DNA of 64,000 nucleotides from Laetmonice hystrix (lineage: Eukaryota): contig OZ249436.1 in NCBI GenBank assembly GCA_965235115.1, positions 17,484,001 to 17,548,000 of the forward strand, read 5' to 3'. A program made the translations under genes and the position numbers. This document shows positions 31,118 through 49,914 of the stretch, piece by piece. The notes below the pieces were generated by a model that ran no database searches, was not told where the DNA came from, and saw nothing but the letters and a program-made list of their open reading frames with translations. The first letter of the stretch is position 1. Every line of letters begins with the position of its first letter.

Positions 31118-31162
<45 letters not shown>

Positions 31163-31362: not shown

Positions 31363-34210
31363 CTCTACTGGTTGTGCTGGATTCATCTCTCAACAGATCA
31401 CAGCCGAGATAGTGCATCCACATGATCTGCGTTTCCTTTTTAAGGAGGCAGTAGAAGACAAATATAAAAAGTCCTTGTAAGGTGTTAAAGATGGCGAACA
31501 GGTAGTGGAACACGATGCCAGCGCCACCTATCGCGAAGAAAGCGAAACCCCACGTAAGCCCGAGCAGGACCATGATGCTCACGGCCCCGCGCAGGCGCGA
31601 TAGCATGGTGACCCGTCTTGACCTGTCCAACTTCTTACTGTCCATGATCCGCAGTTGGTTGGAAACGAGGCCGAACGTCACAAGGTTGAGGACCAGGATA
31701 ATTGTTACCGGGGCCAGGAAGGTTACGAAAAATGGCGTCCTTGACAACCAGCATCTGTACGTCAACAACGGCCAAAAGGTCATTAGTTTTAGACATCGGA
31801 AAAATCACGGAGGGTGGAACCTATACCCTCTCTGTACTCTACTCAATTTGTTGAGTAAACAGTGATTGGTTTTGTTTAAGGTTTGTTTCTAAATCAGATA
31901 TTAAAGTTCGACTCACATTTCTCCCTGTAGGCCGTAGTTACTCGTGTTGACAGCGAGCGTAGACAGGACGATGACCAACGGCGAACCTGGAAACGGGAAA
32001 TGTCTACAGGTCCTATTGGGCTAAGCTACATCAGACACAGAGAGACAGTGGCTACATAGAAATGTGGGCCCTATATGGTTACACCAGACACAGAGGGACA
32101 GGGGGTACATAGAAATGTCGGTCCTATACGGATACACCAGACACAGAGAGAAAGGGGTAGGCCTACATGGAAATGTAGGTCCTATATGGTTACACCAGAC
32201 ACAGAGAGGCAGGGAGTATATAGAAATGTAGCTGGGTCCTATTTAGGCCTATTTAGGCTACACCAGACACAGGGAGACAGGAGGTACTACATAGAAATGT
32301 CGCTCCTATATGATTGCACCAGACACAGAGGGACAGGGGTACATAGAAATGTAGGTCCTATATGGCTACACCAGACACAGAGACAGGGGGACATAGAAAT
32401 GTCGGTTCTATACGTGGTTATACCAGTGAGGACGGAGTCAAGGAGTGAACTTTTTGTTGTTTCCCGTTGGACGCTTGTTCTAACCTTTCACACCCAGACG
32501 TCATACCATACGTCACAGCGATCCTTGTCCCAGTGACCCATACGTCCCAGTGACCCATACGTCCCACTCATATACAGTGTCAGATTGGTGTCGTACTTGT
32601 CTCTTACTTACCCCAGCCGACGAGTACACACTTCAACATGAACTTGGTGTAGTAGGTCTGGAATACACGAACCAGGGCCTGGTACATGTAGAACGCTTCC
32701 AATGACATCCACACCATGGCCGCCAGGAGGCAGTAATGAGTGGCTGCCGCAAATATCTGGAGTGACAATGGGAAAATATACAGCAACGGGGAAGGGTCGA
32801 GGGGGCATGGTGGAACAGGGGGTCGAGGGGGCATGGTGGAACAGGGGAGGGTCGAGGGGGCAGGGTGGAACAGGGGGTCGAGGGGGCAGGGTGGAACAGG
32901 GGGAGGGTTATCTGGGGCCATGCTGCGCTAATTCAAGTTACGTTTATTCACGGCATTGAAAAGTATTTGCCCTGAACAAAGCTATATTTAAAGCTACTCA
33001 AGGTTTCTCCTGGATTAGTTGATTGGGACCAGGCGGACGGACAGACTAGCAGAGACACCCATAGTTACCATACATATTCACTTGTCGATATTACATTATT
33101 ATGCTCTACATCAATTTTACGACACATCGCTTGCGTTCATCGTGCCACACGTCGCGACGCGCGGCCCAGTGTTGGCGAACATCGCGTACCTTGCAGGCGA
33201 TGTGGTTGCCCCTGACGAAGCCCTGGGTGGTGAGGACGAAGGCGATGATGACCCCCAGCAGCGCGGCTGTCAGGTTAACCAGGATCTTGGCTGGGTTCTC
33301 TGTCCTCAACTTCCTGCAGCACAAACCCGCAATGGACACTTACTTCCTGGTTAGGCCTAACTTGTGGAACATCTCAAATCCTCACCTTTAGACGTTCTGC
33401 CTTTAATTCAGGGATATGCGTGGATTTGTCGTCGGCTTATCAAGAAACGAGATAGATCTAAGCCTATTTATGTATAATCTTCAGCGAATCCCATGGAATC
33501 CATAGCTGTAGCAGGATACCTAGGCCTATCTCTAGGCCTACAGTTAATGCTCAATCGACTTCCCATAGTACCACCACAGTTACCCTTGTACACGTCAGAG
33601 GGCGCCACCCCTAACACAGCACGTAACCATACATGGATAACACGCACGCTCACTGGTTAATGATATTACTATTTTTCCAATCGGAACACTCCGGCAATTC
33701 CCGGAAGAAGTCGGAGGATGGAAATAGCCTCGGACAGTGTAAGTGCAATTTTTGCAGACAAATATTTCCCGATTTTCAATTTTGTACTTAGGCAGGCGTG
33801 ATCAGTCCCAGGTGGCTCTTACCGAAAGTCGTAATATTTAGCAGCCAACACGCCTCCGATCACCAGCCTCCGATCTCTTCTAGGAATAATATTGTCAAAG
33901 TGTTTCAACTGCCACTTTTCGTCTGGTGGTGGTTGGGTTTCTTGGGAGACAAATTAATTTAAATATTTCTAAATAATGTCCGGTCAGAAGCCAGAAGGTA
34001 TGAACGTGTTGATTCTCTAACAGATGCCACCACACGGCGCTGCGATCGCAGTGTGCCCTCTGAGGTGCGCCCTGTCTCCTACCTGAATCCCAGGTATGTT
34101 ATGAGGGTACACAGCAAGCCGAACCCCGACAACCCACATCCAATGTACGAGATGTACGACAGCGCCAGCTGGTGACCTTCGTCTATACTACCGGCGTTCC
34201 CATAAACGTC
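31363..34210 (-). CDS. aGPCR secretin-like 7TM region, 5 exons
   Basis: LALSYISYIGCGLS, KLRTENPAKILVNL, THYCLLAAMVWMSLEAFYMY, VGWGSPLVIV, CWLSRTPFFVTFLAPV, LRGAVSIMVLLGLTWGFAFF, YLFAIFNTLQGLFIFVFYC are typical ADGRG-type TM motifs. Confidence 0.96.
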
Positions 34211-37200
34211 CTGAGGAATATAACACGCTATGAACCATGGGAAGAGGCACGTGATACGTCGATCGACAGGAACGCTCTGGCTGAAGGAGGCTCTTACATA
34301 GGCCTATTTAAACTTTACAACTAAAACTCACTACGTTACTCACTGATACCTTATGCTGCGAATGGGTGCAGTAATCTTGGGGCCGGGGTTCGATTCCAGT
34401 AGAGGACTATACAACTTTTCTCTTTCCGGACATTCTCTAAGTAACTGGGTTACGCCTGATGCCCGTGCATTTAAGAAGAAAATTGGTACATGAAATCGTA
34501 CTGAAACGATTAGAGCGCCTCCTACCATGAGAAGAGCGAAGTTGGTGAGGTGGTCACACTGGCAGATTGACCGCCCCCTGTCGGTGTGTAGTAGCCAACA
34601 ACCCTGGGTTGACCAGCCGGCCCTGACGGAGTCCCAGAATACACACCGTGCTGACGTACCGGGCTGAATGAGAAAGTCGGGGGTTAGCGACGCCGGGAAC
34701 TGAAGCCATGGTCCAGGAGACATGTACCGTATTGGAGAGGTATCGGGGAGGGGCGAGCTAGCTATATGTGTATGTACTGGATAACCTGAGCATACCTAGA
34801 AGTAATTTGGTGGCTCCACCTGGCGGGCCAGAGAGGAGAATCTTCTAAAGAGCAGGACTCATAATAAAAAACACTTCCTTGCTATCCCCCAAAAGAACTT
34901 AGAAGACATTTAACTATCTTCCATGTGAAATGTGTGTGCATGGATATATTTTTAAGGCTTTATAATATAATGTCACCTACCATAGTGTGGGTCAGAGTGA
35001 CAGTTATGGGGTCGGTATAACGTCGTCACCTACCTTAGTGTGGGTCAGAGTGACAGTTATGGGGTCGGTATAATGTCGTCACCTACCTTAGTGTGGGTCA
35101 GAGTGACAGTTATGGGGTCGGTATAATGTCGTCACCTACCTTAGTGTGGGTCAGAGTGACAGTTATGGGGTCAGTATAATGTCGTCACCTACCTTAGTGT
35201 GGGTCAGAGTGACAGTTATGGGGTCGGTATAATGTTGTCACCTACCTTAGTGTGGGTCAGAGTGACAGTTATGGGGTCGGTATAATGTCGTCACCTACCT
35301 TAGTGTGGGTCAGAGTGACAGTTATGGGGTCGGTATAATGTCGTCACCTACCTTAGTGTGGGTCAGAGTGACAGTTATGGGGTCGGTATAATGTTGTCAC
35401 CTACCTTAGTGTGGGTCAGAGTGACAGTTATGGGGTCGGTATAATGTCGTCACCTACCTTAGTGTGGGTCAGAGTGACAGTTATGGGGTCGGTATAATGT
35501 CGTCACCTACCTTAGTGTGGGTCAGAGTGACAGTTATGGGGTCGGTATAATGTCGTCACCTACCTTAGTGTGGGTCAGAGTGACAGTTATGGGGTCGGTA
35601 TAATGTCGTCACTTACCTTAGTGTGGGTCAGAGTGACAGTTATGGGGTCGGTATAATGTTGTCACCTACCTTAGTGTGGGTCAGAGTGACAGTTATGGGG
35701 TCGGTAGAATGTCGTCACCTACCATAGTGTGGGTCAGAGTGACAGTTATGTGGTCGGTATAATGTTGTCACCTACCTTAGTGTGGGTCAGAGTGACAGTT
35801 ATGGGGTCGGTATAATGTCACCTACCTTAGTGTGGGTCAGAGTGACAGTTATGGGGTCGGTATAATGTCGTCACCTACCTTAGTGTGGGTCAGAGTGACA
35901 GTTATGGGGTCTGTATAATGTCGTCACCTACCTTAGTGTGGGTCAGAGTGACAGTTATGGGGTCGGTAGAATGTCGTCACCTACCTTAGTGTGGGTCAGA
36001 GTGACAGTTATGGGGTCGGTAGAATGTCGTCACCTACCTTAGTGTGGGTCAGAGTGACAGTTATGGGGTCGGTATAATGTCGTCACCTACCTTAGTGTGG
36101 GTCAGAGTGACAGTTATGGGGTCGGTATAATGTCGTCACCTACCTTAGTGTGGGTCAGAGTGACAGTTATGGGGTCGGTATAATGTCGTCACCTACCTTA
36201 GTGTGGGTCAGAGTGACAGTTATGGGGTCGGTATAATGTTGTCACCTACCTTAGTGTGGGTCAGAGTGACAGTTATGGGGTCGGTATAATGTTGTCACCT
36301 ACCTTAGTGTGGGTCAGAGTGACAGTTATGGGGTCGGTATAATGTCACCTACCTTAGTGTGGGTCAGAGTGACAGTTATGGGGTCGGTATAATGTCGTCA
36401 CCTACCTTAGTGTGGGTCAGAGTGACAGTTATGGGGTCGGTATAATGTCGTCACCTACCTTAGTGTGGGTCAGAGTGACAGTTATGGGGTCGGTATAATG
36501 TCGTCACCTACCTTAGTGTGGGTCAGAGTGACAGTTATGGGGTCGGTATAATGTCGTCACCTACCTTAGTGTGGGTCAGGGTGACAGTTATGGGTCGGTA
36601 TAATGTCGTCACCTACCTTAGTGTGGGTCAGAGTGACAGTTATGGGGTCGGTATAATGTCGTCACCTACCTTAGTGTGGGTCAGAGTGACAGTTATGGGG
36701 TCAGTAAGATTGAAGAGATGTTTCCGACCCACTGCAGCAGAAATTACATGACTGTTTATAGTGCCCAGATCCTGCTCCGCCTCATCATCCGTACTTCTGG
36801 TTTCGTATCTTGATGTGTTTGATACACTTTCAGCTGCCTGGTCAATAGAAAACAGCTTTGTTTAAGATGCCATAGACTATCAAAATGATAACTAATTTTA
36901 CTGTTTCTTTCCAGCATTTTACAGCATGTCTTGTCCTTGTGAGTACAGCGTCATTTCAGATAATACATTAATTTTTCCAGAGTGCATTTGGCCGAAGGCT
37001 TTATTTAGAGAGGCGAAACCGTAATCTAGCCTCGGGTTCTGATACAGGAAATGGAGCTTACCTTAAAGAATACGAACTTGCTGTAGATGACAAACTGCAC
37101 TAGCTGTCTGTCGCGCCCCCTGTTGACGGCCGTCTGAACCACAGAGCCAGGAAGCGTTATGCTGGCCACAACGTCACTGTTACTGTCGGTCACACTGTCG

Positions 37201-40200
37201 ATACCTCTCAGGTGAATCTGGAGATCAAATATGTATGTGACAACAGAGAAGAACAACGATAATGACTCTATAGTTGTTAAGATCTACTAAAGATATAAAG
37301 ATGTTACCCTTGACTCGTCAAGGTCATCGTGAAGGTCACCGACAGCCTCGAAGCTGAGCGGGCCGGCTGTGATTGGTTGTACGACGGCCATGGCGACCCG
37401 AGTCTCGACCATTGTCACCTGACTAGACTCGGGCACAAGCGCGTTCCCTAGGCGTTCCATGCTCTCGATCAGTCTGAATAGGAAGTCAGGGGTCATAGAG
37501 GTCAGCTGGGTTTGATAATGGGTGGAGCTTGCCAAGGTATGATCCATGTACATAATGATTTACTTGGTGGAAACCAACCCAACAAAATGGCTAGGTGTAT
37601 TTTGTCATTATTACAGCAAACACACACGATTTCTATGAAAAAAAGACAAATGAAACATGGGAAGAAAGGCCCCGGATCTGTGCAGGTTATAAAAGGACTT
37701 TATACCTTGTTGCCGAGGCGTCGTTGGCCTCCGTCTCGACCATGACAAGGAGACTAACGTTCAACATCCGGTTGATACTCTCCAACACACGTGACCCGGC
37801 CACTTCTGGTACCGGGACGTCATCAGTATTGACGATGTTCCCAATGACGTCAGCGACCAGGCTCACCTCGTGGCTCGTGAAATCAGCGCCCCCTCGCGTC
37901 AGGTCAGCGAGTTTCTCAGCGATGTCGTTCACTGTGTCTGTGAACAATAACTCAACAAATCAAACCAACCCATCACTGTGTCCGGAACAAACCAAGTCAA
38001 CTCACTGTATCCAGGACAAACCAAGTCAACCAACCACTGTATCCAGGACAAACCAAGTCAACCAACCACTGTATCCGGAACAAACAAAGTCAACCAACCA
38101 ATGTATTCACAACAAACCAAGTGAACCAACCACTGTATCCGGAACAAACCAAGTCAACCAACCACTGTACACAACAAACCAAGTCAACCAACCACTGTAT
38201 CGGTAACAGACAACGTGAACCAACCAATGTATTCACAACAAACCAAGTCAACCAACCACTGTATCCAGGACAAACCAAGTCAACCAACCACTGTATCCAC
38301 AACAAACCAAGTCAACCAACCACTGTATCCAGGACAAACAAAGTCAACCAACCAATGTATCCACAACAAACCAAGTCAACCAACCACTGTATCCGGAACA
38401 AACCAAGTCAACCAACCACTGTACCCAACAAACCAAGTCAACCAACCACTGTATCGGGAACAGACAACGTCAACCAACCACTGTATCCACAACAAACCAA
38501 GTCAACCAACCACTGTATCCGGAACAAACCAAGCCAACAAACCACTGTACACAACAAACCAAGTCAACCAACCAATGTATCCACAACAAACAAAGTCAAC
38601 CAACCACTGTATCCACAACAAACCAAGTCAACCAACCACTGTATCCGGAACAAACCAAGTCAACCAACCACTGTATCCACAACAAACCAAGTCAACCAAC
38701 CACTGTATCCGGAACAAACCAAGTCAACCAACCACTGTACACAACAAACCAAGTCAACCAACCACTGTATCGGGAACAGACAACGTCAACCAACCAATGT
38801 ATTCACAACAAACCAAGTCAACCAACCACTGTATCCACGCCAAACCAAGTCAACCAACCACTGTATCCACAACAAACCAAGTCAACCAACCACTGTATCC
38901 AGGACAAACAAAGTCAACCAACCACTGTATCCACAACAAACCAAGTCAACCAACCACTGTATCCGGAACAAACCAAGTCAACCAACCACTGTATCCACAA
39001 CAAACTAAGTATACCAACCACTGTATCCACGCCAAACCAAGTCAACCAACCACTGTACCCAGAACAAAGCAAGTCAACCAATCACTGTATCCACAACCAA
39101 CCAAGTCAACCAACCAGTGTATCCACAACAAACCAAATCAACCAGTCACGTTATTCTCGTTCTGATAAATGCATCCCAATTTCACATTATAAAACAGACG
39201 AGGGTTCAGGACTTTACGTTGAAGCTCATTAGCGCCATTTTCTCGGAGTCTATATGAGACGTGGACAGGTGTCCGTGCCCGCCTGTGACATCCTACAAAT
39301 GGCAAAATTAATTGAATCGTTTTTCAGACAGTTTGCCGTAGAATTCATGGAGATGAAACGATAGAGTCGAAAGGTCAGGGCCGATTGACGATCTCGAGCA
39401 GGCAAGACGCATGCAGTCAGAGTATATTATTTAGAGTCGTTCTTTTGGAGAATACTATACTAAACAGACAAGTGATGAACATCTGTATTTAGAATAAAGA
39501 AGGAGAGTCCGTGCAACTTCTCACAATAAAGACGATACGAAAATAAGTCAACAGAACCTCAATGAAATGCTTACTTGTTGCTTCTTGTTGCCCTGTTTAT
39601 GGCAGAAACGGACATTTGAACATTTTATTCAATAGTATTCCTGCATGGAAGCTTAGGGTAGGCCCATTATCTCTCGAGTCATACCTCCTCTATTGAAACT
39701 CAGTCTAATACAACAGACTGAAAGAGAAAAACATAAATAGCGATTCCGTTCCTTGGACTTGTCTAGTTTCTGCTTCGTTTCGGACGTTGTTCATTACACA
39801 TGACGCGTAGGGACTAGGTCACAAAATCTTGGACTGTGGTTTGTGTATGTATGAAAAGTTTCGGAGTAGTAACGCACAAGTCGGGCCATGTCTGATCTAA
39901 TCTTTTTTTTCCGTTTCGGTATTCGTGCAATAACCCCAACCCCCCGGAAGAACCCCCTCAAACCCGGACCTGTTGCCGTGGTAACAGAACCAAGAATCCG
40001 TAGTTACCATTCGTGACAGGTTGTTTGGCGAGATCCTCAAGATCTTGCGTTCTCTCGCTGGGGTAGGAACAGGAAGTGACGTCAGAGTTGATCCAGCGTG
40101 GCTTCCCTCCCGCGTCCTGCACACTGTGATAGATACAGTCAGTTAGATTACTACTTCCGTTCACTTTAAAACTGAGGGAGCGAGCGAGAGCGAGAGAGAT

Positions 40201-41228
40201 TTATTTCAGGGCCTACTCACCATGTGTTGCTAGGGGTCAGAGAGAGAGACACACACACAAAAGTGAGAGAGAGAGAGCAAGAGAGAGAGAGAGATAGAGA
40301 AATAGAGAGAGAGAGATTTTACTCACCAAGCCACTGCCATGTTTTGCCGGGAGTCGGCGAGACACTCAATGACCGACACCTGACCTACCAACGTTGACGA
40401 GAGTTTGATGAACCGTTTCTCGTTCCGGAACCCGGCACAGAAACCTTCACATAAATAAATACTCTATAAAGGGTCTGTATAATCTATATATAATTTAGAT
40501 TTCCATCAGTGTGCTAACGTATAGATATTGGACCCGTCGGCCACGCTCCGTGCTTAATGCCCTAATTAGTTCTCGACTTCGCCTCGAACCTATTTAATAT
40601 GCAATACCGAATTAAAAACAGTAGACCAGCAATCCTTTTTGGGGCCAATGTCGAAACCATTTCCAAATTACGACATATTAAATTGATTGTCTATGATCCT
40701 GTAATCGTAAAAGTCACATCTACATACGGCAAATGTTAAGCCTTAATAATATTTGGATCATGACGAGACTGACCTTCACCGACAAGGGTGACCTTTTCCT
40801 CGTCGATACGAAGTACGTCTGCGTGCTTTTGTATGACGTCATAGATCTCGTCTCGGAGTCGCGCCACGTTGGTTCCGAAATCGGACTGGCAGACGACATG
40901 TGTCTGAACCAGTGTCCACATGACGATCGAACTGGACCTGGAACGGAAGGTCATCCGAATGTCAGTATAGTCGCCGTNNNNNNNNNNNNNNNNNNNNNNN
41001 NNNNNNNNNNNNNNNNNNNNNNNNNNNNNNNNNNNNNNNNNNNNNNNNNNNNNNNNNNNNNNNNNNNNNNNNNNNNNNNNNNNNNNNNNNNNNNNNNNNN
41101 NNNNNNNNNNNNNNNNNNNNNNNNNNNNNNNNNNNNNNNNNNNNNNNNNNNNNNNNNNNNNNNNNNNNNNNNNNNNNNNNNNNNNNNNNNNNNNNNNNNN
41201 NNNNNNNNNNNNNNNGAGTGAGAGAGAG

Positions 41229-41267
<39 letters not shown>

Positions 41268-44200
41268 AATTTCTATACTCACGGACTTCTCTCGAACCCA
41301 TAAATTTTCGATCTGCACAAAGCGATGTCGATTCCTGCCATCGTTTCGTCAATCTAAATAAGATCACATTGTTCTATTTTGTGAGCTAGGAAAAAATGGT
41401 AAAATAAAATTACCAAAGGCCTATTTTAGTTTATGATATTGAAAGGATGCTTCATATTAAAAAAAGCGTGCGTTTCGTGGCTCACTTGTTTTTCTAAATC
41501 TCGGGCGGTATCGTGGAAAGTGGTGCTGTTTGAGTCGTCCAGGTTGTCGTCATAAGACGTGTGAAGGATAACTCGAAGGTCATAGGTCACGTCAATGTGG
41601 TAACCTGTATCATACAACTCGAAGGTCAAAGGTCACGTCAATGTGGTAACCTGTATCATACAACTCGAAGGTCAAAGGTCACGTCAATGTGGTAACCTGT
41701 ATCATACAACTCGAAGGTCAAAGGTCACGTCAATGTGGTAACCTGTATCATACAACTCGAAGGTCAAAGGTCACGTCAATGTGGTAACCGGTATCATACA
41801 ACTCGAAGGTCAGAGGTCACGTCAATGTGGTAACCTGTATCATAGAACTGTTTGAAAGCAAATCTCTGTCTGTCTGTCTGTCTGCCTGTTGGTATGTATG
41901 TCTGTCTGTCTGTCATATTGACTTCCATACTGACTCAGTTTCCCTGTTTCAGTCACCCATATGATCATACGGGTTTCGCTTGAATTCCTGTCTTGGTGAT
42001 TAATGTTCGTTCTTATGAAGCTATAAGAAAAAAAATCAACGGACAAAATCCGGAATTCGGGGGTAGCTAATTAACCCCTTCCTTATACCCACCGTCCAGC
42101 AGCGTGGGCACCACACATTCCTCCGAGGTGCAGCACAGCGAGCACGTCTTGGACGCACACGTGACGTCATTCTTTGACATTAGCGCCGCACATCCGGATG
42201 ACGTCCCGCATTGTGACGTCATACTCGAGCCGTTGGTCGTCGATATCCGCAGGTCGACGTGACACGCGTCCTGGCGCAAAAAAACCCAGGTTTAATATCA
42301 CATAACGAAACAATAATAGCATTTTCACAATCTTTCTACGTACATTGATGAGCCTAGACACACACACATAAATAGAGTCAATAGGAAACAGATCTATCCT
42401 TCGTTAAACTGAAATTAAGGTTATATACATACTTTGTGTAGACTAGGCATAATAGGTCTCGGTCACATGCTTCTGCTGACCCTGAACCGTGTGAATTATA
42501 GGACCCTAATAGATCGATTCTGAACCGAATAGATAATTCTGAAGGTTATGTCTAGAGGCCAACTTTAGAAATCTATAGGCTCTAAACAACATAGAACTAG
42601 ATGACATAGGCCTATTATTACTCGCTGGCGATGCTTACGTTGCTTTATGCCCTGATAAAAGTTCAATTATTAAATAATAATGCACCCGTTGCGACCTGGT
42701 CCAAATCTCGCGACATTGTGACGGGTTTTCATGTCGACGGTGTTGTCCTGTATGCCCTCGGCTATACCTCGGGCATATGGTCACACTATAACACATCTCA
42801 ACCTCCCGCTGTTATGAACTATCACTTTATATTACCTGTCCTGTACTGCATTCCCGAGTCGCCCCCCTTTGTTCACAATCCTCGACGTTTCCCCCGCCAT
42901 CGCATGTTAAACACGACAGCGGCTGCAGTTCTGGAACAAAATGGAAATGTCTNNNNNNNNNNNNNNNNNNNNNNNNNNNNNNNNNNNNNNNNNNNNNNNN
43001 NNNNNNNNNNNNNNNNNNNNNNNNNNNNNNNNNNNNNNNNNNNNNNNNNNNNNNNNNNNNNNNNNNNNNNNNNNNNNNNNNNNNNNNNNNNNNNNNNNNN
43101 NNNNNNNNNNATGATGATAATTTCCACCTACCCGGACATTTTTCCCCGTGAGACACGACCAGTTCAAGTAGGGGTCTGTTGTCAAAGTTTTGACACGTGG
43201 CATTCGTTAGAGTCAACGCCTGAATACCCATACTCCTCCTTTCATTAATCCATTTCTGGAGGCGCAATTCATGGCAGTCACAAAGAATTCTGTTGCTCCC
43301 GAGAGTCCTGTGTGAAAGAATGCATTTCATAAGTTTCGAGATATATTAATTATTTCACTTGGAAAGTTGAAGAGATTTTTCAGGCAGCCAGCCATACTTA
43401 CACCTCGGCGAGGTTGGGTAGAAGTTTGAATACGTCACTGGGAAGTTTCGTAATGTTGCTCTTGTCGAGGCGTCTGAAGATGTGATATATACATTTATTA
43501 CTTGGAAAAATACAGCTGGAACGTTAAATACCACCACTTATCACCGGAGAGTGTGCCCTCGCCACACTCCCAGAATTACATACAAAAACCTTGTAACCGC
43601 ACAGTTCTGTTTACTGAGCATGTGACGGCGGCAGGAAAGAGATGGTTTTTATTAGATGGTGGGTAAATTTAAAACTTACAATTTTATTAGATTAACGAGG
43701 TGATGAAATGTATATGAACGGATGACGCCGAGATCGTTTCGATAGAGGTTCCTGAAACAGGTAGTGTAATAAACAAATGCCCCTCTAGGTGGCAGTGTAC
43801 ATAACAAATGCCCCTGAAAGTGGCAGTGTACATAAACAAATGCCCCTCTAGGTGGCAGTGTATACATGAGCAAATGCCCCTGAAAGTGGCAGTGTACATG
43901 AACAAATGCCCCTGAAAGTGGCAGTGTACATAAACAAATGCCCTGAAAGTGGCAGTGTACATGAGCAAATGCCCCTGAAAGTGGCAGTGTACATGAGCAA
44001 ATGCCCCTGAAAGTGGCAGTGTACATGAGCAAATGCCCCTGAAAGTGGCAGTGTACATGAGCAAATGCCCCTGAAAGTGGCAGTGTACATGAACAAATGC
44101 CCCTGAAAGTGGCAGTGTACATGAACAAATGCCCCTGAAAGTGGCAGTGTACATAAACAAATGCCCTGAAAGTGGCAGTGTAAATAAACAAATGCCCCTG

Positions 44201-46872
44201 AAAGTGGCAATGTACATGAACAAATGCCCCTGAAAGTGGCAGTGTACATGAACAAATGCCCCTGAAAGTGGCAGTGTACATGACCAAATGCCCCTGAAAG
44301 TGGCAGTGTACATAAACAAATGCTTCTGAAACAGGCAATGGACATGAACAAATGCTCCTGAAACAGGCAATGGACATGAACAAATGCTCCTGAAACGTAC
44401 ATACCACCTACCACCTATTCATGGTATTGTAACCTATTGTGGCTCATATAAAGGAAATTGGCGTAACTTCCATTAATAGCCTGTACGATCGAGTTTGCTT
44501 CAAGAACTAGTTTACTGAGTTTTCGGAAATTTAACATGAGACAATAATTCTGTAATTAATCTCAGTTCAGAAGTTATGAACTTACAATATTTCTAATTGG
44601 TAGAGATTCCGAAACGCATTAGGTTCGATCTCGCTGATGCTGTTATTCTGCAAGTCTCTGAAATAAATTCAACCAAAAAACATTACTTCAGCAGTCACGA
44701 TAGAGGTTGACCGTTTTAAAACAGTTGTCATAGTAACCGGCTCACCAATATATGATGAGATCGATGATGATGTGGGTTGATCATTTATATAATGAGATCG
44801 TTGGCTACTATTACACAGCTTTCGTTATGGTATCGGGCAGTTCTTATAAACTATGGTTGAATAAAGGTGATGAACACTTACAATATCTTCAGTCTTGTAA
44901 ATTCCGAAAATTCAGATGACTTCAAAACTTTTATACCGTTACTTCTGAGGTACCTGAAAAATAACAGGAATATTTTAACTGATGCTAAATCTAAAACAGT
45001 GATATTCTACGGCGGTATCTTCTTTATTCACGCTCGTGTTCTTAATACGTAGGTCCATCACCCCGCACTTTTAGACTTTACCCATCACACCCCGTGCACT
45101 AATCTCTTTTAGACCTCACCTATCACACCCCGTGTCTTAATGTCTTTAAGACTTTACCCATCACACCCCATGCACTAATATCTTAGAGACTTTACCCATC
45201 ACACCCCGTGCACTAATATCTTATAGACTTTACCCATCACACCCCGTGCACTAATCTCTTTTAGACCTCACCTATCACACCCCGTGTCTTAATGTCTTTA
45301 AGACTTTACCCATCACACCCCATGCACTAATATCTTATAGACTTTACCCATCACACCCCGTGCACTAATATCTTATAGACTTTACCCATCACACCCCGTG
45401 CACTAATCTCTTTTAGGCCTCACCCATCACACCCCGTGCCTTAATCTCTTTGAGACTTTACCCATCACACCCCGTGTGTAACAACCACTTTTGTCATTTT
45501 TACCACTTTTGTCACCGGTCATCACTTTTGTCACACAAAATGCCCACTTTTGTCACAGGTCACCACTTTTGTCACAACGTCGCCCACTTTTGTCGTTCTT
45601 AAGGACATCACTTTAGTCATAATTTTTTGACCGGTTTTGTTAAACTTGTCAAGGCCAAAAAAAGACAGCGTGGCAGAAATGAGATGGTTTACGGATAACA
45701 GATCCATGAAGTCAGGGGCACATATTGCATTAGTTGATATTAAAACTTTTACTCCTTCATGAACAAACAATAATCAAGTAAGCAAGATCTGTGTGGTAAA
45801 TACAGTAGGTGAAAGCTATGCCAGTATACGCCCTCTTCTAATAAAGTCTTGTGCTATAAATACCAGGTAGTGGTTTCTATTGTCCAGGTTTGTTTGTCAC
45901 ACCTCACGCCGGCGACTCTGTACGGCAGTCAGTTACAGTCAACAGTTTTTCCTGTAGACAGTATGACACCGCCAGACATGCTTGGTTGTACACCTTCTTT
46001 TCATTTGGACAGACAGGACGGTGGAAATGGTGTCTTGATTAATGTGAAATATGTTCTACCTGTAAAACCTTCTGATGTTTAAGTCGGTGTTCACTTATAT
46101 TGCTTTGTGGTAAAGAACACACTAAAATACAGCCATGTTGGCAATTGGTTTTGGAGGTGAGATCCTAATTTGTATATAAATGACTGTAACTATGTTGACC
46201 TTGACGTTGGGTGACGACTGTCGTATGCAGAACGTCGGTGTCACGTGCCTCATTGTCCATGGTGCCCTGATTTTATCATTTTTGTTAATATGTTTTAATG
46301 AAATCAACTTGCAGGAAGAAACTATGGATGGTCCCCCTATTTTTAATGCTACAGACGGGATCTACACCTCCAGGGCTTTGGTTGTTGCCTGTAAAATGTT
46401 TTTATCTTAGTAAAACAATGTGGTTGTGTGGGACACCACTCTGGAGGTCCAGTTTGACCTCTCCACTATATAAAGTCAGGAAACCACTGGTCAAATGTAC
46501 AGTGAACGGTCACGTCTGAAAGTATCGCTTAGATAGACGCGGGTCTGTCTCCCATGAACTGGCTGATGGGTCGGAAGGAGCTTGCATGGGTCCACGTTCG
46601 GTCGTAGTCTGGCAACACGTGCTGATGATTCAAACACTGACAGTATGATGAGTCACTTAGTGTCCACTTGGAGGCGGGAGGGTGCAAGCCTGAGAAAAGT
46701 GCGACATGACTCTTCTAAAGGGATGTAGCAATACAACCCGTTCCCCGTCAGTGGGTCGATCTGTGGCACGGTTCCGAATGGCGACTATCATTGGGTTATC
46801 ACGTGTTGTCTCAGACGCCAGATCTTCGAACGGTAGGATGAACGAATCTAGTCGACTAAGACCAAATTCACT

Positions 46873-46950
<78 letters not shown>

Positions 46951-47005
46951 CCTCTGCCTCTCCCCCATATCGCTCTTTCTCCCTCTCGCCCTCCCCCATA
47001 TCTCT

Positions 47006-47059
<54 letters not shown>

Positions 47060-49914
47060 TCTGTCTCTCTCTTTCTCCCTCTCTCTGTATTGCCCTCCCN
47101 NNNNNNNNNNNNNNNNNNNNNNNNNNNNNNNNNNNNNNNNNNNNNNNNNNNNNNNNNNNNNNNNNNNNNNNNNNNNNNNNNNNNNNNNNNNNNNNNNNNN
47201 NNNNNNNNNNNNNNNNNNNNNNNNNNNNNNTCTATACTACCATAATGCACGGCGCACCGAAGCAGACCTGGCTGGGAGGATCCCCTTTTGTTCAAAATGA
47301 AATGAAAAAGTTGAAAATACATTTACACGCCTTCTCCGGCCTTTTCTTTTACCGGTGCAAAATTTTATAACTTGCGAGCCTACGCATTATTAGCAGCACG
47401 TTAAGCACACATTTCACACAAAGACATCAATAACTATCCCGACATGGGGAGACTACATACATTGTACGCCAGAATCATACAAGTAGTCAGGTATATCACA
47501 GGAGGAGGGGGGTGAGATTTGTCAGTCGAAAACTAGGTTATTAGGGAGAAATGTTCGGTGTGACAAAAGTGGGCACAGTGCATGGGGCATGACAGTCCAA
47601 AAATTATGAATAAAGTGGTGCCCTCGAGAACGACAAAAGTGGGATAAAAGTGGTGACCTGTGACAAAGGTGGGCATTGTGTGCGACAAAAGTGGTGACCC
47701 AGCTGTAGTGTGACAAAAGTGGTAAAAATGACAAAAGTGGTTGCTACACCCGTGCACTCATGTCTAGATTTTACCCATCACACCCCGTGCACTCATCATA
47801 CAGCGCCAGCAGATACCACGGGAAGACTATAAAACGGGCGCTGTGGAGCCTGTAGATCTTAATATTTGAAGAATAACCGGAATCAGCGTGATCATGTGGG
47901 AAAGTGCGTTGGCTTGATGAATTGGTCAAGACGGGGAAATATAGGGATAGGTCTAAGTTACCAAAAAAGTAGTGTCAGCCTGCCGCTACTCATTTCATTG
48001 TAAATAGGACAATATTTCGGTGAAACCCTAGTCAGCACTAAAGCGGAGAACTGACTAGGGTGCCGACTTGTCTAACTAGGGCCAGGGTAGTTACGCCCTT
48101 TCCCTCCCGTCCTCGACGCTGATTGATTTCAAGACTCACCCTCAACAAATGCTCTAATCTCATCAATCTATGTCATCCTGCCTGACGTTTGTTTGACCTT
48201 CTAAACTCCGAGTATCGACCCTTGTATCAGTGCGCGGCAGTGATTCGCCGTCTGTGTCACTGCACGGGCATGATAACGGCTTAGTCAGGCATACATGACG
48301 TCACGCACTACGTCACGCGTCACGTAATGCGCTACGTCACGCGTCACGGCAAGCTGCATGCGCGCGGCATGACCACCTTGTCGGAGAGTAGACGGCTTCA
48401 GGTGTGGAAATGTCGATTTGGAGTAGATAGGCCTATATGTATTAGACCAATGCCTAACTCACCCCAGGACCCTATCAACTGAGCCGTACACATCTAACTT
48501 AGTCCCAGATTTACCGAATCTAACCGTGTCTTAGAATACTATATCTAGGACCTACTACATAGCATGGAGTTGTGGTTAGGCCTATTTAACATATACTACA
48601 CGTCAGGCCGCCCATCCTAGAGAACAGTGGCCGGGTTTCTCAGTCACATTTGGGATCCCAAAATAGTCACCTTCCTTCTTTTCTTTTTTTTTGGGGGGCA
48701 GGCATTTGGATCGACCTTTTTTCGGCCCAAATTAAGCAAGGTGGTTGAGAAACAGGCCCCTACAGTTTTAAGTAGGGGCGTAGGAAGCTGGGGGCAGAGG
48801 GGCTGCTGCCCCCCCCCCCCAATATTTATAAAATGACCGCATGGCTCAATGCAAAAGCATAGGCATAAGTCATTGTGCGTCACTTCTGCCCCCCCCCCCC
48901 CCCAATATTGTTTTCCTTTCTACACTACTGTTAAGGCCTGGTCATCTTGTATTTTGTAGCCTTATTAGGAATTCCTCTATAAGGCGAACCGTCTCGGCGG
49001 TCGTGACGTTAAAATTACCATAAACAAAGGCGGTATAAGGAACCAGCTGACATTTTGTTTAGACAGGGAGTGTATGGCTCCATGGACAGGGTGGGCTTTA
49101 TTCACGGAACCGACGCAGGAACTGAGACAAGCCAGGGAACATGGCAAATATTGGGATGATGATATGATATTGAATGTAACCACTGAATGACTGTTAATAA
49201 CAGACGGAATGTTTGCATATAACAACCCTCTTCCGCGGATCAACGTTTACTGAGTACTTGCAGTATTTGAATTCTCTATCCCCCTCACTGAATAACAGTA
49301 TCTGGACACTTGCCTCTTACTGAGTAACAGTATCTGGACACTTGCCCCTTATTGAGTAACAGTATCTGGACACTTGCCTCTTACTGAGTAACAGTATCTG
49401 GACACTTGCCCCTTATTGAGTAACAGTATCTGGACACTTGCCTCTTACTGAGTAACAGTATCTGGACACTTGCCCCTTACTGAGTAACAGTATCTGGACA
49501 CTTGCCCCTTACTGAGTAACAGTATCTGGACACTTGCCCCTTACTGAGTAACAGTATCTGGACACTTGCCCCTTTGAGTAACAGTATCTGGACACTTGCA
49601 TCTTACTAAGAGTAACAGTATCTTAACACTTGCCCCTTACTAAATAGGCTGAGTAAGATTACTTACAGACTTTCGACATCGCTGGGGATACCATCAGGCA
49701 GAGTCGCATCAAGTCCGTGCCGGGAGCAGTCGACGCCCATGATGACTTCGTCACACCGGCAGCGGCCCCTCGGACACGGCCATGGGACGACCTGAGTCCG
49801 GAGCCGGGAGGTCGGGTCGGACGGTAGAGGCGAGGTCGAGCAGGCGACCGGCCTGACCGTAATCATCATGACCGTAAAGAACGTAAAGACCAGTGTTGCT
49901 ACCATCAGGTACAT
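31363..49914 (-). CDS. Adhesion GPCR (LRR-LU-SEA-HormR-GAIN/GPS-7TM); 7TM is ADGRG-like; last exon unresolved, one exon partly in an N-gap
   Basis: Exons in minus-strand order: 49914-49667, 44953-44882, 44657-44586, 43751-43680, 43473-43402, 43307-43132, 42930-42836, 42270-42093, 41604-41486, (gap)40977-40780, 40444-40327, [40229-40221], 40123-40008, 37937-37706, 37473-37308, 37217-37062, 36837-36670, 34663-34526, 34210-34083, 33313-33190, 32756-32612, 31986-31917, 31754-31363. All checkable junctions are AG/GT and phase-compatible; more than 1080 codons. Confidence 0.93.
32030..32405. repeat. Degenerate intronic repeat of about 50-55 bp
   Basis: ACACCAGACACAGAG(A/G)GACAGGGG(G)TACATAGAAATGT.GGTCCTAT recurs about 7 times. 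Confidence 0.75.
32797..32905. repeat. G-rich repeat of about 26 bp, about 4 copies
   Basis: GGTCGAGGGGGCA(T/G)GGTGGAACAGGG. Confidence 0.8.
34526..40444 (-). CDS. aGPCR hormone-receptor domain + GAIN domain with GPS
   Basis: FCAG...C...CVQDAGGKPRWINSDVTSC (HormR); ASATRLIESMERLGNAL, VQFVIYSKFVFF, INSHVISAAV, NLTDPITVTLTH (GAIN); CVFWD...GWSTQGC...CQCDHLTNFALLM (GPS, HL/T site). Confidence 0.93.
34965..36703 (-). repeat. 53-bp minisatellite, about 33 copies, each containing the GAIN exon 3' end and its splice donor
   Basis: Minus-strand unit GACCCCATAACTGTCACTCTGACCCACACTAAG|GTAGGTGACGACATTATACC; the first copy is the real exon end (DPITVTLTHTK|). Confidence 0.95.
37960..39145. repeat. 32-bp C/A-rich degenerate intronic minisatellite, about 37 copies
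   Basis: CAAACCAAGTCAACCAACCACTGTATCCGGAA and variants. Confidence 0.93.
40780..41604 (-). CDS. aGPCR SEA-like domain, 2 exons (second begins in N-gap)
   Basis: YHIDVTYDLRVILHTSYDDNLDDSNSTTFHDTARDLEKQ matches the SEA N-half pattern (Y..L.D.NS..F...A..LE.Q). IRMTFRSRSSSIVMW...LRIDEEKVTLV matches the C-half. Confidence 0.75.
40978..41215. other. Assembly gap (N) hiding the 5' end of the second SEA exon
   Basis: Run of N abutting open reading frame. Confidence 1.
41573..41844 (-). repeat. 46-bp repeat x6 containing the SEA exon acceptor and first codons
   Basis: Minus-strand unit GAGTTGTATGATACAG|GTTACCACATTGACGTGACCTTTGACCTTC. Confidence 0.92.
42093..42930 (-). CDS. aGPCR Ly6/uPAR (three-finger)-like cysteine-rich module, 2 exons
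   Basis: LSCLTCDGGGNVEDCEQRGATRECSTGQ|DACHVDLRISTTNGSSMTSQCGTSSGCAALMSKNDVTCASKTCSLCCTSEEC. An N-terminal CxxC and a C-terminal CCxxxxC resemble LU domains. The exons are solid; the fold name is an inference. Confidence 0.7.
42953..43110. other. Assembly gap (N), intronic
   Basis: Run of N. Confidence 1.
43132..44953 (-). CDS. aGPCR LRR block: four 72-nt phase-2 LRR exons + LRR C-cap exon
   Basis: YLRSNGIKVLKSSEFSEFTRLKIL, DLQNNSISEIEPNAFRNLYQLEIL, NLYRNDLGVIRSYTFHHLVNLIKL and RLDKSNITKLPSDVFKLLPNLAEV are each exactly 72 nt. They are followed by TLGSNRILCDCHELRLQKWI...ATC...CP (LRRCT). Confidence 0.92.
43775..44397 (-). repeat. 32-bp minisatellite, about 19 copies, homologous to the adjacent LRR exon acceptor
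   Basis: Minus-strand unit GGGCATTTGTTCATGTACACTGCCACTTTCAG vs real acceptor GGGCATTTGTTTATTACACTACCTGTTTCAG|G. Confidence 0.9.
45061..45476. repeat. 38-bp minisatellite, about 11 copies; resumes at 47749-47795 after the transposon
   Basis: CCCCGTGCACTAATATCTTATAGACTTTACCCATCACA. Confidence 0.92.
45477..47748. mobile_element. Non-autonomous TIR DNA transposon, about 2.3 kb, Ginger-like termini (TGT...ACA)
   Basis: Left end TGTAACAACCACTTTTGTCATTTTTACCACTTTTGTC; right end is its near-perfect reverse complement. Subterminal CACTTTTGTCA motifs are repeated. Flanking direct repeat CCCGTG (45471-45476 and 47749-47754). No transposase ORF; contains (CT)n and an N-gap. Confidence 0.9.
47100..47230. 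other. Assembly gap (N) inside the transposon
   Basis: Run of N. Confidence 1.
49290..49640. repeat. 32-bp intronic minisatellite, about 11 copies
   Basis: ACTGAGTAACAGTATCTGGACACTTGCCCCTT. Confidence 0.93.
49667..49914 (-). CDS. aGPCR first coding exon: signal peptide + LRR N-cap
   Basis: MYLMVATLVFTFFTVMMITVRPVAC (hydrophobic leader) then CPRGRCRCDEVIMGVDCSRHGL (LRRNT cysteine pattern); donor CT|GTAAGT, phase 2. Confidence 0.85.

What the first reader, a model, noticed from the sequence alone, without database searches (positions are those of the whole stretch)
31363..49914. Adhesion GPCR with an unusual ectodomain: LRR + Ly6/uPAR-like + SEA + HormR + GAIN
Seen: the domain order was reconstructed exon by exon. 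The LU, SEA and HormR modules each start and end in phase 1. Established: in vertebrates LRRs mark ADGRA (LRR-Ig-HormR-GAIN), SEA occurs in ADGRF and ADGRG6, and no human aGPCR carries an LU domain. The 7TM here looks ADGRG-like. Inference: a lineage-specific receptor assembled by phase-1 exon shuffling, possibly a pattern-recognition or mechanosensory receptor.
Basis: partly seen in the sequence, partly recalled or inferred. Interest (0 to 1): 0.7.

Follow-up and report, generated by a model that had tools for sequence, protein, structure and literature searches.

The report
LRR–LU adhesion GPCR, ancient family

Summary
On the minus strand, 49914 to 31363, lie 23 exons with canonical AG/GT sites and matching phases. 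They encode at least 1,095 residues in this order: signal peptide, LRRNT, five LRRs, LRRCT, LU, SEA-like module, HormR, GAIN/GPS (HL|T), 7TM.

All three assembly gaps fall in introns, so no coding sequence is needed from them. One RNA-like contig confirms the exon 9 to exon 10 splice and corrected my first SEA model.

The 7TM is closest to ADGRG2, G4 and G6.

- **LU** is well supported: all 12 conserved Cys are present, and the family profile hits LYPD6 and Lynx2.
- **HormR** is moderately supported.
- **SEA** is supported mainly by position, exon structure and family-level fold, not by the window's own sequence.

The "lineage-specific" inference fails. Lingula and a scallop have the same 23 exons with identical intron phases. 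LRR–LU relatives occur in molluscs, nemerteans, annelids and echinoderms; a shorter hemichordate protein has LU–HormR–GAIN–7TM. The core (SEA–HormR–GAIN–7TM) is ADGRG6-like, with LRR–LU where ADGRG6 has CUB–PTX.

LU-bearing GPCR-like genes were already noted in starfish (2022, 2024) and in molluscs and arthropods (2026). I file this as a new member of a known, uncharacterised kind. The C-terminal tail exons were not found.

The parts
49667..49914 (-). Exon 1: ATG at 49914, signal peptide, LRRNT (4 Cys) and the start of LRR1. Leaves in phase 2.
   Evidence: Pfam LRRNT is weak (E 0.2). BLASTP of the N-terminal 197 aa to homologues' LRR regions gives 2e-23 to 2e-15. Corresponds to exon 1 of Lingula and Ylistrum.
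44882..44953 (-). Exon 2: one 24-residue LRR, 72 nt, phase 2 to 2.
44586..44657 (-). Exon 3: LRR, 72 nt, phase 2 to 2.
   Evidence: (family HMM E 7e-5)
43680..43751 (-). Exon 4: LRR, 72 nt, phase 2 to 2. Its acceptor is the end of a 32-bp x 20 tandem array.
43402..43473 (-). Exon 5: LRR, 72 nt, phase 2 to 2.
43132..43307 (-). Exon 6: last LRR and LRRCT (CDC...C...C). Phase 2 to 1. The donor lies 21 nt before the gap.
42953..43110 (.). Assembly gap, inside intron 6.
   Evidence: Both splice sites lie outside the gap and the phases match (1/1). Homologues have no extra exon here.
42836..42930 (-). Exon 7: first part of the LU domain (Cys 1-4). Phase 1 to 0.
42093..42270 (-). Exon 8: second part of the LU domain (Cys 5-12, ending CC-x4-C). 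Phase 0 to 1.
   Evidence: Family HMM E 5e-5. All 12 conserved Cys columns are filled. LU HMM built without window rows scores 38.6 bits, against 8.2 for the best of 2000 shuffles. The LU profile hits LYPD6, LYPD1, SLURP1 and CD59.
41486..41604 (-). Exon 9: SEA-like module, strand 1 and helix 1. Phase 1 to 0. The acceptor is the last copy of a 46-bp tandem repeat.
   Evidence: Pfam SEA E 0.014. The RNA-like contig covers 41486-41576 and splices at 41486..
41283..41353 (-). Exon 10: SEA-like module, 71 nt. Phase 0 to 2.
   Evidence: A contig of run X4 joins 41486 to 41353 with GT..AG ends, and a second contig leaves the genome at about 41281-41283. Matches the 22-24 aa exon 10 of Lingula and Ylistrum.
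40978..41215 (.). Assembly gap, inside intron 10.
40780..40937 (-). Exon 11: SEA-like module, strands 3-4 and helix 2. Phase 2 to 1.
40327..40444 (-). Exon 12: first half of HormR (Cys 1-2). Phase 1 to 2. The donor splits the codon of Cys 3.
40008..40123 (-). Exon 13: second half of HormR (W, Cys 4). Phase 2 to 1. An alternative, stronger-looking acceptor at 40171 would add 16 residues in frame.
   Evidence: Family HMM E 0.004. The short form scores 13 bits better and matches the Cys-to-W spacing in Lingula, Ylistrum and a closer relative.
37706..37937 (-). Exon 14: GAIN subdomain A.
   Evidence: Pfam GPR128_GAIN_subdomA E 0.036. Family HMM 6e-7.
37308..37473 (-). Exon 15: GAIN.
37062..37217 (-). 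Exon 16: GAIN.
36670..36837 (-). Exon 17: GAIN. Its last 37 nt plus the donor are copied about 33 times in the intron that follows (34972-36706).
   Evidence: Family HMM 1e-7. TRF.
34526..34663 (-). Exon 18: GPS motif with the HL|T cleavage site and the start of the tethered agonist (TNFALLM).
   Evidence: Pfam GPS 3.1e-14..
34083..34210 (-). Exon 19: rest of the tethered agonist and TM1.
33190..33313 (-). Exon 20: TM2.
32612..32756 (-). Exon 21: TM3.
   Evidence: Family HMM 3e-24.
31917..31986 (-). Exon 22: TM4.
31363..31754 (-). Exon 23: TM5-TM7 and the start of the cytoplasmic tail. Ends at a conserved phase-1 donor (GAG|GTAAGA). The tail exons beyond it were not found.
   Evidence: Pfam 7tm_2 1.8e-14. 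Best PDB matches are ADGRG2, G4 and G6. Lingula and Ylistrum have a phase-1 intron at the same residue. Closer relatives P0177 and P0178 diverge completely right after it.
47100..47230 (.). Assembly gap, inside intron 1, beside a (CT)n microsatellite.
   Evidence: Homologues have the same four LRR exons between exon 1 and LRRCT.

Best explanation
The window holds an intact gene for an adhesion (class B2) GPCR. It belongs to an old invertebrate family whose membrane-proximal half (SEA, HormR, GAIN/GPS, 7TM) is of the ADGRG2/G4/G6 type and closest to ADGRG6/GPR126. Its tip is an LRR block plus one Ly6/uPAR (LU) three-finger domain, where ADGRG6 has CUB and pentraxin.

**Shown here.**
- The exon structure and the order of the modules.
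- The canonical GPS motif (C..W..W..C..C.C.HL|T) followed by a tethered-agonist sequence (TNFALLMDV).
- Conserved 7TM motifs: CWL in ECL2 and GLTW in TM6.
- The same 23-exon layout in three phyla.

**Inferred from how ADGRG2/4/6 and other aGPCRs work.**
- The GAIN domain cuts itself at HL|T, and the two fragments stay together.
- The LRR and LU modules bind a partner on another cell or in the matrix.
- Pulling on or removing the outer fragment frees the tethered agonist, which enters the 7TM bundle and switches on a G protein. This would probably be Gs, as for G2/G4/G6.

The phase-1 borders of LU, SEA and HormR fit assembly by exon shuffling. That assembly predates the split of annelids, brachiopods and molluscs.
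For: - **Gene model:** all sites are canonical and the frames are consistent.
- **Whole-length match:** end-to-end alignment to Haliotis and Lingula proteins; family HMM 870-883 bits.
- **Pfam on exons:** GPS 3e-14 and 7tm_2 1.8e-14.
- **7TM class:** TM5-7 is nearest to ADGRG2, G4 and G6 structures.
- **LU:** 12 of 12 conserved Cys. HMM score 38.6 bits against 8.2 or less for 2000 shuffles. The family profile hits LYPD6 at 1e-8 and LYPD1 at 1e-8.
- **HormR:** the family profile hits the ADGRG6 HormR (6v55, residues 447-506) at 1.7e-9. The window scores 16.2 bits against 10.5 or less for shuffles.
- **SEA:** the family profile's top PDB hit is the ADGRG6 SEA, residues 359-445, E 0.003. The AF2 model of the Haliotis homologue (pLDDT 82) has a beta-alpha-beta-beta-alpha-beta domain. 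Its top Foldseek hits are the Gpr126 ectodomain (3e-5), MUC16 SEA domains, TMPRSS6, whose match I read as its SEA domain, and the SEA domain of a mouse transmembrane protease.
- **Splicing:** the exon 9 to exon 10 splice is seen in an RNA-like contig.
- **Exon conservation:** one-to-one exon correspondence and identical phases in Lingula and Ylistrum.
- **Tree:** the window sits in a lophotrochozoan subclade of a 46-row invertebrate clade where LU is common. The sister 37-row clade has no LU and includes SEA_Gpr126 members.
Against: - The window's own SEA segment is barely recognisable by sequence: 5.5 bits, second among 2000 shuffles; hhalign E 0.022; no pairwise hits.
- Its HormR has lost the first conserved Trp (WP is LS here) and the Arg of A-x-R-x-C.
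- The LU domain ends in CV rather than CN.
- The 7TM branch is long, 0.94.
- The C-terminal tail exons are missing from the model.
- RNA support is two short contigs from one small run of uncertain type.
- No functional data exist for any family member.
- Cleavage, ligand and G-protein coupling are inferred, not shown.
Confidence: 0.85

Rival explanations
1. Two genes lie head to tail: a secreted or anchored LRR-LU protein (exons 1-8) and a separate SEA-HormR-GAIN-7TM receptor (exons 9-23). On this view they are joined only by my model.
For: No RNA read spans the LU-to-SEA or the LRRCT-to-LU junction. The RNA-like run X4 showed no contigs on the LU exons. A gap sits in intron 6.
Against: Exon 8 ends at a phase-1 donor with no stop, and exon 9 has no start codon or signal peptide. 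The phases match across every junction. RefSeq models in more than ten species join the same modules in one protein. Lingula and Ylistrum have the same exons in the same order and phases. Contigs show presence, not absence.
Confidence: 0.03
2. The gene is a decaying or non-functional copy. The architecture is ancestral, but this copy no longer makes a working receptor.
For: The terminal branch is long. The SEA and HormR modules are degenerate. Tandem arrays carry decoy splice sites at three exon borders. The tail exons were not found.
Against: There is no stop or frameshift in 23 exons and all splice sites are canonical. The GPS, Stachel, CWL and GLTW motifs are intact. All 12 LU cysteines are kept. 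A spliced contig exists.
Confidence: 0.08
3. It is an ADGRA-type (GPR124/125-like) receptor, as the LRR block and NCBI's name for one homologue (Physella 'A3-like') would suggest.
For: An N-terminal LRRNT-LRR-LRRCT block followed by HormR and GAIN resembles ADGRA. P0045 is named ADGRA3-like.
Against: No Ig domain is present; an LU and a SEA module sit in that position. The SEA and HormR profiles are closest to ADGRG6. TM5-7 is closest to G2, G4 and G6. Most homologues are named G6-like or G2-like. No ADGRA 7TM sequence was compared directly.
Confidence: 0.03

Closest known systems
ADGRG6 / GPR126 (ectodomain structure 6v55, zebrafish)
   Same: The order SEA, HormR, GAIN/GPS, 7TM is the same. 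The family SEA and HormR profiles hit 6v55 first (E 0.003 and 1.7e-9). The AF2 model of a homologue hits 6v55 first. The 7TM lies in the G2/G4/G6 group. The HL|T site and a Stachel-type agonist are present.
   Different: There are no CUB and no pentraxin domains; LRRNT, five LRRs, LRRCT and an LU domain sit at the tip instead. The window's SEA has no G|SVVV-type cleavage motif. The invertebrate LRR-LU clade is separate from the clade holding the SEA_Gpr126 proteins.
Starfish LU-bearing 'GPCR-like' proteins LyAr2/LyAp2 (Mar Drugs 2022 PMC9410279; 2024 PMC11595613) and the mollusc and arthropod LU-GPCRs of Acta Naturae 2026 (PMC13719153)
   Same: These have an LU domain in the ectodomain of a GPCR that NCBI annotates as an adhesion GPCR. 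Their LU is most like LYPD6 and Lynx2, as found here. Acanthaster proteins of this family (P0063, P0069) appear among my homologues, but I did not check whether either is LyAp2.
   Different: Those papers list the proteins in surveys of three-finger proteins. They do not analyse SEA, HormR, GAIN, exon structure or the relation to ADGRG6. The 2026 survey reports no LU-7TM genes in annelids, brachiopods or nemerteans, whereas Capitella, Owenia, Lingula and Tubulanus have them. In the three echinoderm members I inspected, a mucin-like linker replaces SEA.
ADGRA2/3 (GPR124/125)
   Same: They have an N-terminal LRR block with LRRCT, then HormR and GAIN.
   Different: ADGRA has an Ig domain and neither LU nor SEA. 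The 7TM here is nearest to G2/G4/G6.
LYPD6 / LYPD1 (Lynx2) single LU-domain proteins
   Same: The cysteine framework is shared. They are the best solved-structure matches of the LU profile (1e-8).
   Different: Those are small GPI-anchored or secreted proteins. Here the LU domain is one module of a 7TM receptor, carries 12 Cys, and in the window lacks the final Asn of the CCxxxxCN motif.

Membership tests
Adhesion GPCR (class B2) | GPS motif at the end of a GAIN domain, directly before the 7TM | tested here: met
   Pfam GPS 3.1e-14 on exon 18. The sequence is C..W..W..C..C.C.HL|T. Weak GAIN subdomain A hit and family HMM hits on exons 14-17.
Adhesion GPCR (class B2) | Secretin-type seven-helix domain (7tm_2) | tested here: met
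   Pfam 7tm_2 1.8e-14 on the last exon alone. Five exons are collinear with the 7TM of homologues.
Adhesion GPCR (class B2) | Autoproteolysis at HL|T and activation by the tethered agonist | not testable with these tools
   The motif and the TNFALLMDV sequence are present. Cleavage and signalling need experiments.
ADGRG2/G4/G6 group of subfamily VIII | 7TM more similar to G2/G4/G6 than to other aGPCR families | tested here: met
   PDB ranking: G2 2e-27, G4 6e-26, G6 9e-25, L2 1e-19, D1 4e-17, E5 6e-13, F1 1e-9. This is not a full phylogeny with all families.
ADGRG6 (GPR126) proper | CUB and pentraxin domains at the N-terminus | tested here: not met
   The N-terminus is LRRNT-LRR-LRRCT-LU. CUB and Pentaxin hits occur only in other members of the alignment.
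ADGRG6 (GPR126) proper | SEA followed by HormR, then GAIN | tested here: met
   Met at family level. In the window the order and exon structure are the same, HormR is detectable and SEA is weak.
ADGRA | LRR block plus Ig domain plus HormR | tested here: not met
   LRR and HormR are present. There is no Ig hit in 28 family members, and LU and SEA occupy that place.
Ly6/uPAR (LU) domain | Conserved cysteine framework of the three-finger fold, ending in CC-x4-C-N | tested here: met
   All 12 family-conserved Cys are present. 38.6 bits to the LU HMM built without window rows. The profile hits only LU-fold proteins. The final Asn is Val in the window. No Pfam hit on the single exons, and phmmer with exon 8 alone finds no LU protein.
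SEA domain | About 110 residues with a beta-alpha-beta-beta-alpha-beta fold | tested here: inconclusive
   Family level is met: the AF2 model of Haliotis P0006 matches MUC16 and transmembrane-protease SEA domains and Gpr126. For the window itself there is only Pfam SEA E 0.014 on exon 9, 5.5 bits to the family HMM and hhalign E 0.022. The spliced window segment could not be folded because it has no single reference.
SEA domain | G|SVVV-type autoproteolysis motif (present in some SEA domains only) | tested here: not met
   The window has ...ERSPSSSIVMW... at that place.
HormR (HRM) domain | Four conserved Cys, two conserved Trp, and A-x-R-x-C | tested here: inconclusive
   The four Cys and the second Trp are present with family spacing in the short splice form. 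The first Trp and the Arg are replaced. 16.2 bits against 10.5 or less for 2000 shuffles. The family profile hits HormR of ADGRG6, ADGRB2, BAI3, CRFR2 and LPHN1.

The most novel reading that the evidence does not exclude
LRR-LU-(SEA)-HormR-GAIN-7TM is the ancestral bilaterian form of the ADGRG2/G4/G6 lineage. It is kept in lophotrochozoans and ambulacrarians and was lost or re-tipped with CUB-PTX in vertebrates. On this reading the LYPD6/Lynx-like LU domain is a built-in binding or modulating module, for example for a Wnt co-receptor or a Cys-loop receptor, or in cis on the receptor's own LRR. That would make this an unrecognised aGPCR subfamily with a new ligand logic.
Probability: 0.15. Interest if true: 0.55.

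Novelty: new member of a known kind. Interest (0 to 1): 0.3.

Why it matters
The gene adds an annelid-type member to a family of adhesion GPCRs that is widespread in invertebrates but has never been studied functionally. It also gives that family a clearer description: an ADGRG6-like core with an LRR plus LU tip, and a 23-exon structure conserved across at least three phyla.

The description corrects automatic names such as 'G6-like', 'G2-like' and 'A3-like'. It extends the reported range of LU-bearing GPCRs to annelids, brachiopods and nemerteans. It also offers a natural case for studying how swapping the tip of an aGPCR changes what it senses.

It does not open a new kind of system.

Tried and rejected
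- **First SEA model.** It had two exons, with the second running into gap 40978-41215. I rejected it after the X4 contig showed a 132-nt GT..AG intron (41485-41354) and a 71-nt exon. The three-exon form matches Lingula and Ylistrum.
- **Exon 9 acceptor at 41571.** Rejected because the RNA-like contig continues to 41576. 41604 is the phase-1 acceptor that fits.
- **A fifth LRR exon at 44515-44434** (81 nt, weak donor GTTACA). Not needed: homologues have four LRR exons here.
- **Read-through of the last exon to the stop at 31196.** Rejected because three relatives diverge exactly at the donor 31363, and Lingula and Ylistrum have an intron there.
- **Search for tail exons.** I looked for a PDZ-type C-terminal motif and for conservation with a relative's downstream 10 kb. 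Nothing convincing turned up.
- **Pfam on single exons** gave only weak or no hits for LRR, LU and HormR. phmmer with LU exon 8 alone found no LU protein.
- **The window's own protein** is not in the 50% or 90% protein collections. The best hits are 45-57% and 75% on one exon.
- **Walking 30 kb up a relative's contig** (L003, L005, L007, L008) recovered TM, GPS, GAIN and HormR exons. No LRR, LU or SEA exons lay within 12.7 kb upstream of its HormR. That copy may be a paralogue, or its introns may be long.
- **P0177's contig** had no DNA on offer.
- **Runs X1-X3** proved to be DNA-like, since they cover introns evenly, so they say nothing about splicing.
- **Not done.** I did not lay reads over any stretch containing N. 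I did not hand in the spliced protein as typed letters, so Pfam and AlphaFold were not run on the window's whole ectodomain.
Full report
**What is there.** The minus strand between 49914 and 31363 carries a multi-exon gene. Stop-to-stop frames showed the obvious pieces. These were a signal peptide with an LRRNT cysteine knot, 72-nt LRR exons, an LRRCT, a cysteine-rich module, GAIN-like pieces, a textbook GPS motif and five 7TM exons.

Pfam on single exons gave GPS 3.1e-14 and 7tm_2 1.8e-14. It gave only weak hints for SEA (0.014), GAIN subdomain A (0.036) and LRRNT (0.2).

An exhaustive HMMER search with the last exon found 4,526 relatives. The best full-length ones were 43-57% identical over that exon. 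They are RefSeq models named 'adhesion GPCR G6-like / G2-like / G4' from molluscs, the brachiopod Lingula and the nemertean Tubulanus.

Between them, Pfam finds LRR_8, Toxin_TOLIP or UPAR_LY6_2, SEA, HRM, GAIN, GPS and 7tm_2, in that order along the chain.

**Gene model.** I used splice signals and phases and a family HMM built from 14 homologues. The result is 23 exons with canonical AG/GT sites and one open frame.

The spliced product aligns in a single BLASTP HSP with Haliotis P0006/P0152 (61-1105 against 54-1152, 32% identity). It aligns likewise with Lingula P0156. It scores 870-883 bits as one domain against the family HMM.

The N-terminal 197 residues contain:
- LRRNT with 4 Cys;
- five LRRs in 24-residue register;
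- LRRCT with 4 Cys.

This region hits the Pfam-positive LRR regions of homologues at 2e-23 to 2e-15.

**The assembly gaps.** All three lie in introns of this model.
- Gap 47100-47230 is in the 4.7-kb intron 1, next to a (CT)n run.
- Gap 42953-43110 is in intron 6. The phase-1 donor after 43132 lies 21 nt before it and the phase-1 acceptor before 42930 lies 22 nt after it.
- Gap 40978-41215 is in intron 10.

For the third gap my first model was wrong. I had read the open frame just after the gap as the start of a SEA exon hidden in it.

I laid public runs on the N-free stretch 41216-42952. Runs X1-X3 are DNA-like. The small run X4 has a 151-nt contig that joins 41486 to 41353, skipping 132 nt with GT..AG ends on the minus strand, and reaches 41576. 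A second X4 contig leaves the genome at about 41281-41283.

That gives three SEA exons with phases 1, 0, 2, 1: 41604-41486, 41353-41283 and 40937-40780. No coding sequence is needed from the gap.

I did not lay reads on any N stretch and did not try to recover gap letters. Intron lengths across the gaps are unknown.

**Independent check from other phyla.** I fetched the loci of Lingula P0156 and the scallop Ylistrum P0001 and mapped each protein back exactly.
- Both have the same 23 exons, one for one.
- Both have the same intron phases: 2,2,2,2,2,1,0,1,0,2,1,2,1,2,0,0,0,0,2,0,1,2, then a phase-1 donor after TM7. My junction check failed at two introns in each homologue; there I read phase 0 from the contiguous exon boundaries.
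- Both have four single-LRR exons, a two-exon LU, a three-exon SEA whose middle exon is 22-24 residues, and a two-exon HormR whose intron splits the codon of the third cysteine.

This validates the window model in detail.

**Two uncertain details.**

*Exon 13 acceptor.* Exon 13 can start at 40171 (the stronger polypyrimidine tract) or at 40123, 48 nt downstream and in frame. The short form:
- scores 13 bits better against the family;
- restores the family spacing from the split Cys to the conserved Trp (+10 in the window and Ylistrum, +11 in Lingula);
- agrees with a closer relative, which also starts its exon right at the Cys.

I prefer 40123, but RNA must decide.

*The 3' end.* The frame of the last exon stays open to 31196. 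I nevertheless end the exon at 31363, for three reasons.
- The donor GAG|GTAAGA at 31363 sits at the very residue where Lingula and Ylistrum have a phase-1 intron.
- Two closer relatives (P0177 at 75%, P0178 at 63%) diverge completely from the window and from each other right after '...STS[RK]G'.
- Many homologues end in a PDZ-type [ST]-x-[VIL], whereas the read-through does not.

The short tail exons remain unfound.

**The modules.**

*LU.* The two window exons fill all 12 conserved cysteine columns of the family alignment. A family HMM built without the window scores the window segment 38.6 bits, against a best of 8.2 in 2000 shuffles. The profile finds only LU-fold proteins among solved structures: LYPD6 1.1e-8, LYPD1/Lynx2 1.2e-8, LYPD6B, SLURP1, CD59 and activin receptors. 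Alone, the exons hit nothing, so the link is through the family.

*HormR.* The profile's best solved match is the HormR of zebrafish Gpr126 (6v55, residues 447-506, 1.7e-9). ADGRB2, BAI3, CRFR2 and latrophilin follow. The window scores 16.2 bits against 10.5 or less for shuffles. It has lost the first Trp and the Arg of A-x-R-x-C.

*SEA.* The profile's top solved match is the SEA of Gpr126 (residues 359-445, E 0.003). An AlphaFold model of Haliotis P0006 residues 232-522 (pLDDT 81.7) shows a beta-alpha-beta-beta-alpha-beta domain between LU and HormR. Foldseek ranks the Gpr126 ectodomain first (3e-5). Next come MUC16 SEA domains, TMPRSS6, whose match I read as its SEA domain, and the SEA domain of a mouse transmembrane protease.

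The window's own segment is very divergent: 5.5 bits, hhalign E 0.022 and no pairwise hits. There the SEA label rests on position, length, exon structure and a collinear alignment. It has no G|SVVV-type site.

*GAIN/GPS and 7TM.* The GPS motif is canonical, with HL|T followed by TNFALLMDV. CWL in ECL2 and GLTW in TM6 are present. TM5-7 is closest to ADGRG2 (2e-27), G4 (6e-26) and G6 (9e-25), well ahead of L, D, E and F.

**Where it belongs.** A quick ML tree of 86 GPS-7TM regions separates two clades.
- A 37-row clade (support 100) holds the proteins with SEA_Gpr126 and has no LU.
- A 46-row clade (support 83) has at least 21 members with an LU hit.

The 46-row clade splits into an echinoderm and hemichordate part and a lophotrochozoan part. 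The window lies in the lophotrochozoan part, on a long branch (0.94).

Named members include many molluscs, Lingula, Tubulanus, the annelids Capitella and Owenia, the echinoderms Acanthaster, Lytechinus and Diadema, and the hemichordate Glandiceps. The Glandiceps protein is shorter and shows LU, HormR, GAIN, GPS and 7TM but no LRR hit. In the three echinoderm members I inspected (P0063, P0069, P0088), a Thr/Pro-rich linker replaces SEA.

The receptor is therefore not lineage-specific. It is a member of an old family with an ADGRG6-like core and an LRR-LU tip. Other notes of this scan describe the genome as a worm's (giant cuticle collagen). I did not test that, but the tree position fits a lophotrochozoan.

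**Is it known?**
- The 2026 consortium review of aGPCRs does not mention uPAR or three-finger domains, molluscs or annelids.
- Scholz et al. 2019 note that invertebrates hold unassigned aGPCR subfamilies and that G2/G4/G6 form their own group. They give no domain descriptions.
- The three-finger-protein literature has seen these genes. Starfish LyAr2 and LyAp2 were recognised as parts of adhesion GPCRs with LYPD6-like LU domains (PMC9410279; PMC11595613).
- A 2026 survey reports LU-bearing GPCR-like genes in molluscs, arthropods and echinoderms. Its figure legend lists LRR, LU, GPS and 7TM (PMC13719153).
- That survey lists annelids, brachiopods and nemerteans without such genes, which my hits contradict.

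In the papers I searched, none describes the SEA-HormR core, the ADGRG6 relation or the conserved exon structure, and none reports a function. I file the finding as a new member of a known, barely characterised kind.

**How it most likely works.**

Shown here: the parts list and the intact motifs.

Inferred from ADGRG2/4/6 and aGPCRs in general:
- the GAIN domain cleaves itself at HL|T;
- the LRR-LU-SEA-HormR-GAIN fragment stays bound to the 7TM fragment;
- a partner bound by the LRR and/or LU modules, or mechanical pull, exposes the tethered agonist;
- the agonist activates the 7TM and a G protein, probably Gs.

The rivals are two separate genes, a decaying copy, and an ADGRA-type receptor. 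Each has little support.

Noticed in passing
window 34972-36706; 41570-41849; 43751-44395; 37953-39144; 32785-32908; 32027-32426; 49281-49641: Seven minisatellite arrays sit on or within 41 nt of exon borders of this one gene. Three include exon sequence plus a splice site. The 53-bp x 33 array copies the last 37 nt of exon 17 plus its donor. The 46-bp x 6 array copies the acceptor and the first 35 nt of exon 9. The 32-bp x 20 array ends at the first base of exon 4, and each of its units carries a 'tttcag' acceptor-like site. The units are not multiples of 3, so using a decoy site would break the frame.
   Followed up: partly
L007 12468-12680 (ENA ERZ25767047 ctg38536, related species): A related species' copy of this receptor has at least four tandem copies of the end of the GPS exon (CDH[EL]TNFALLM) beside that exon. 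This is the same kind of array as in the window, but at a different exon, so the phenomenon recurs in this lineage.
   Followed up: partly
L001 9442-10311 (-) and L002 12553-13929 (+): In both Lingula and the scallop Ylistrum a rhodopsin-type GPCR gene (7tm_1) is nested in the intron between the two LU exons. The two share 43% identity over TM6-7 (E 3e-23). The window's corresponding intron is only 565 nt, and tblastn finds no such gene anywhere in the window.
   Followed up: partly
window 40123 / 40171: Two in-frame acceptors lie 48 nt apart at HormR exon 13. The upstream one has the better pyrimidine tract, while the downstream one gives the conserved HormR spacing. This may be alternative splicing that adds 16 residues with an extra Cys.
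   Followed up: partly
P0073 (Capitella), P0150 (Owenia), P0156 (Lingula), P0030/P0160 (Tubulanus): The 2026 survey of LU proteins (PMC13719153) lists annelids, brachiopods and nemerteans as lacking LU-7TM genes. These proteins carry an LU module by my family HMM ahead of a 7TM that the search matched. Pfam confirms 7tm_2 in P0073, P0156 and P0030; P0150 and P0160 were not scanned.
   Followed up: partly
P0063, P0069, P0088 (echinoderms): In these three echinoderm members a Thr/Pro-rich, mucin-like linker lies between LU and HormR, where lophotrochozoan members have the SEA module.
   Followed up: no
window 41216-41270, 46880-47086, 40220-40320, 31020-31180: Long (GA)n/(CT)n microsatellites flank at least two of the assembly gaps and the 3' end of the gene. 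They are probably why the assembly broke there.
   Followed up: no
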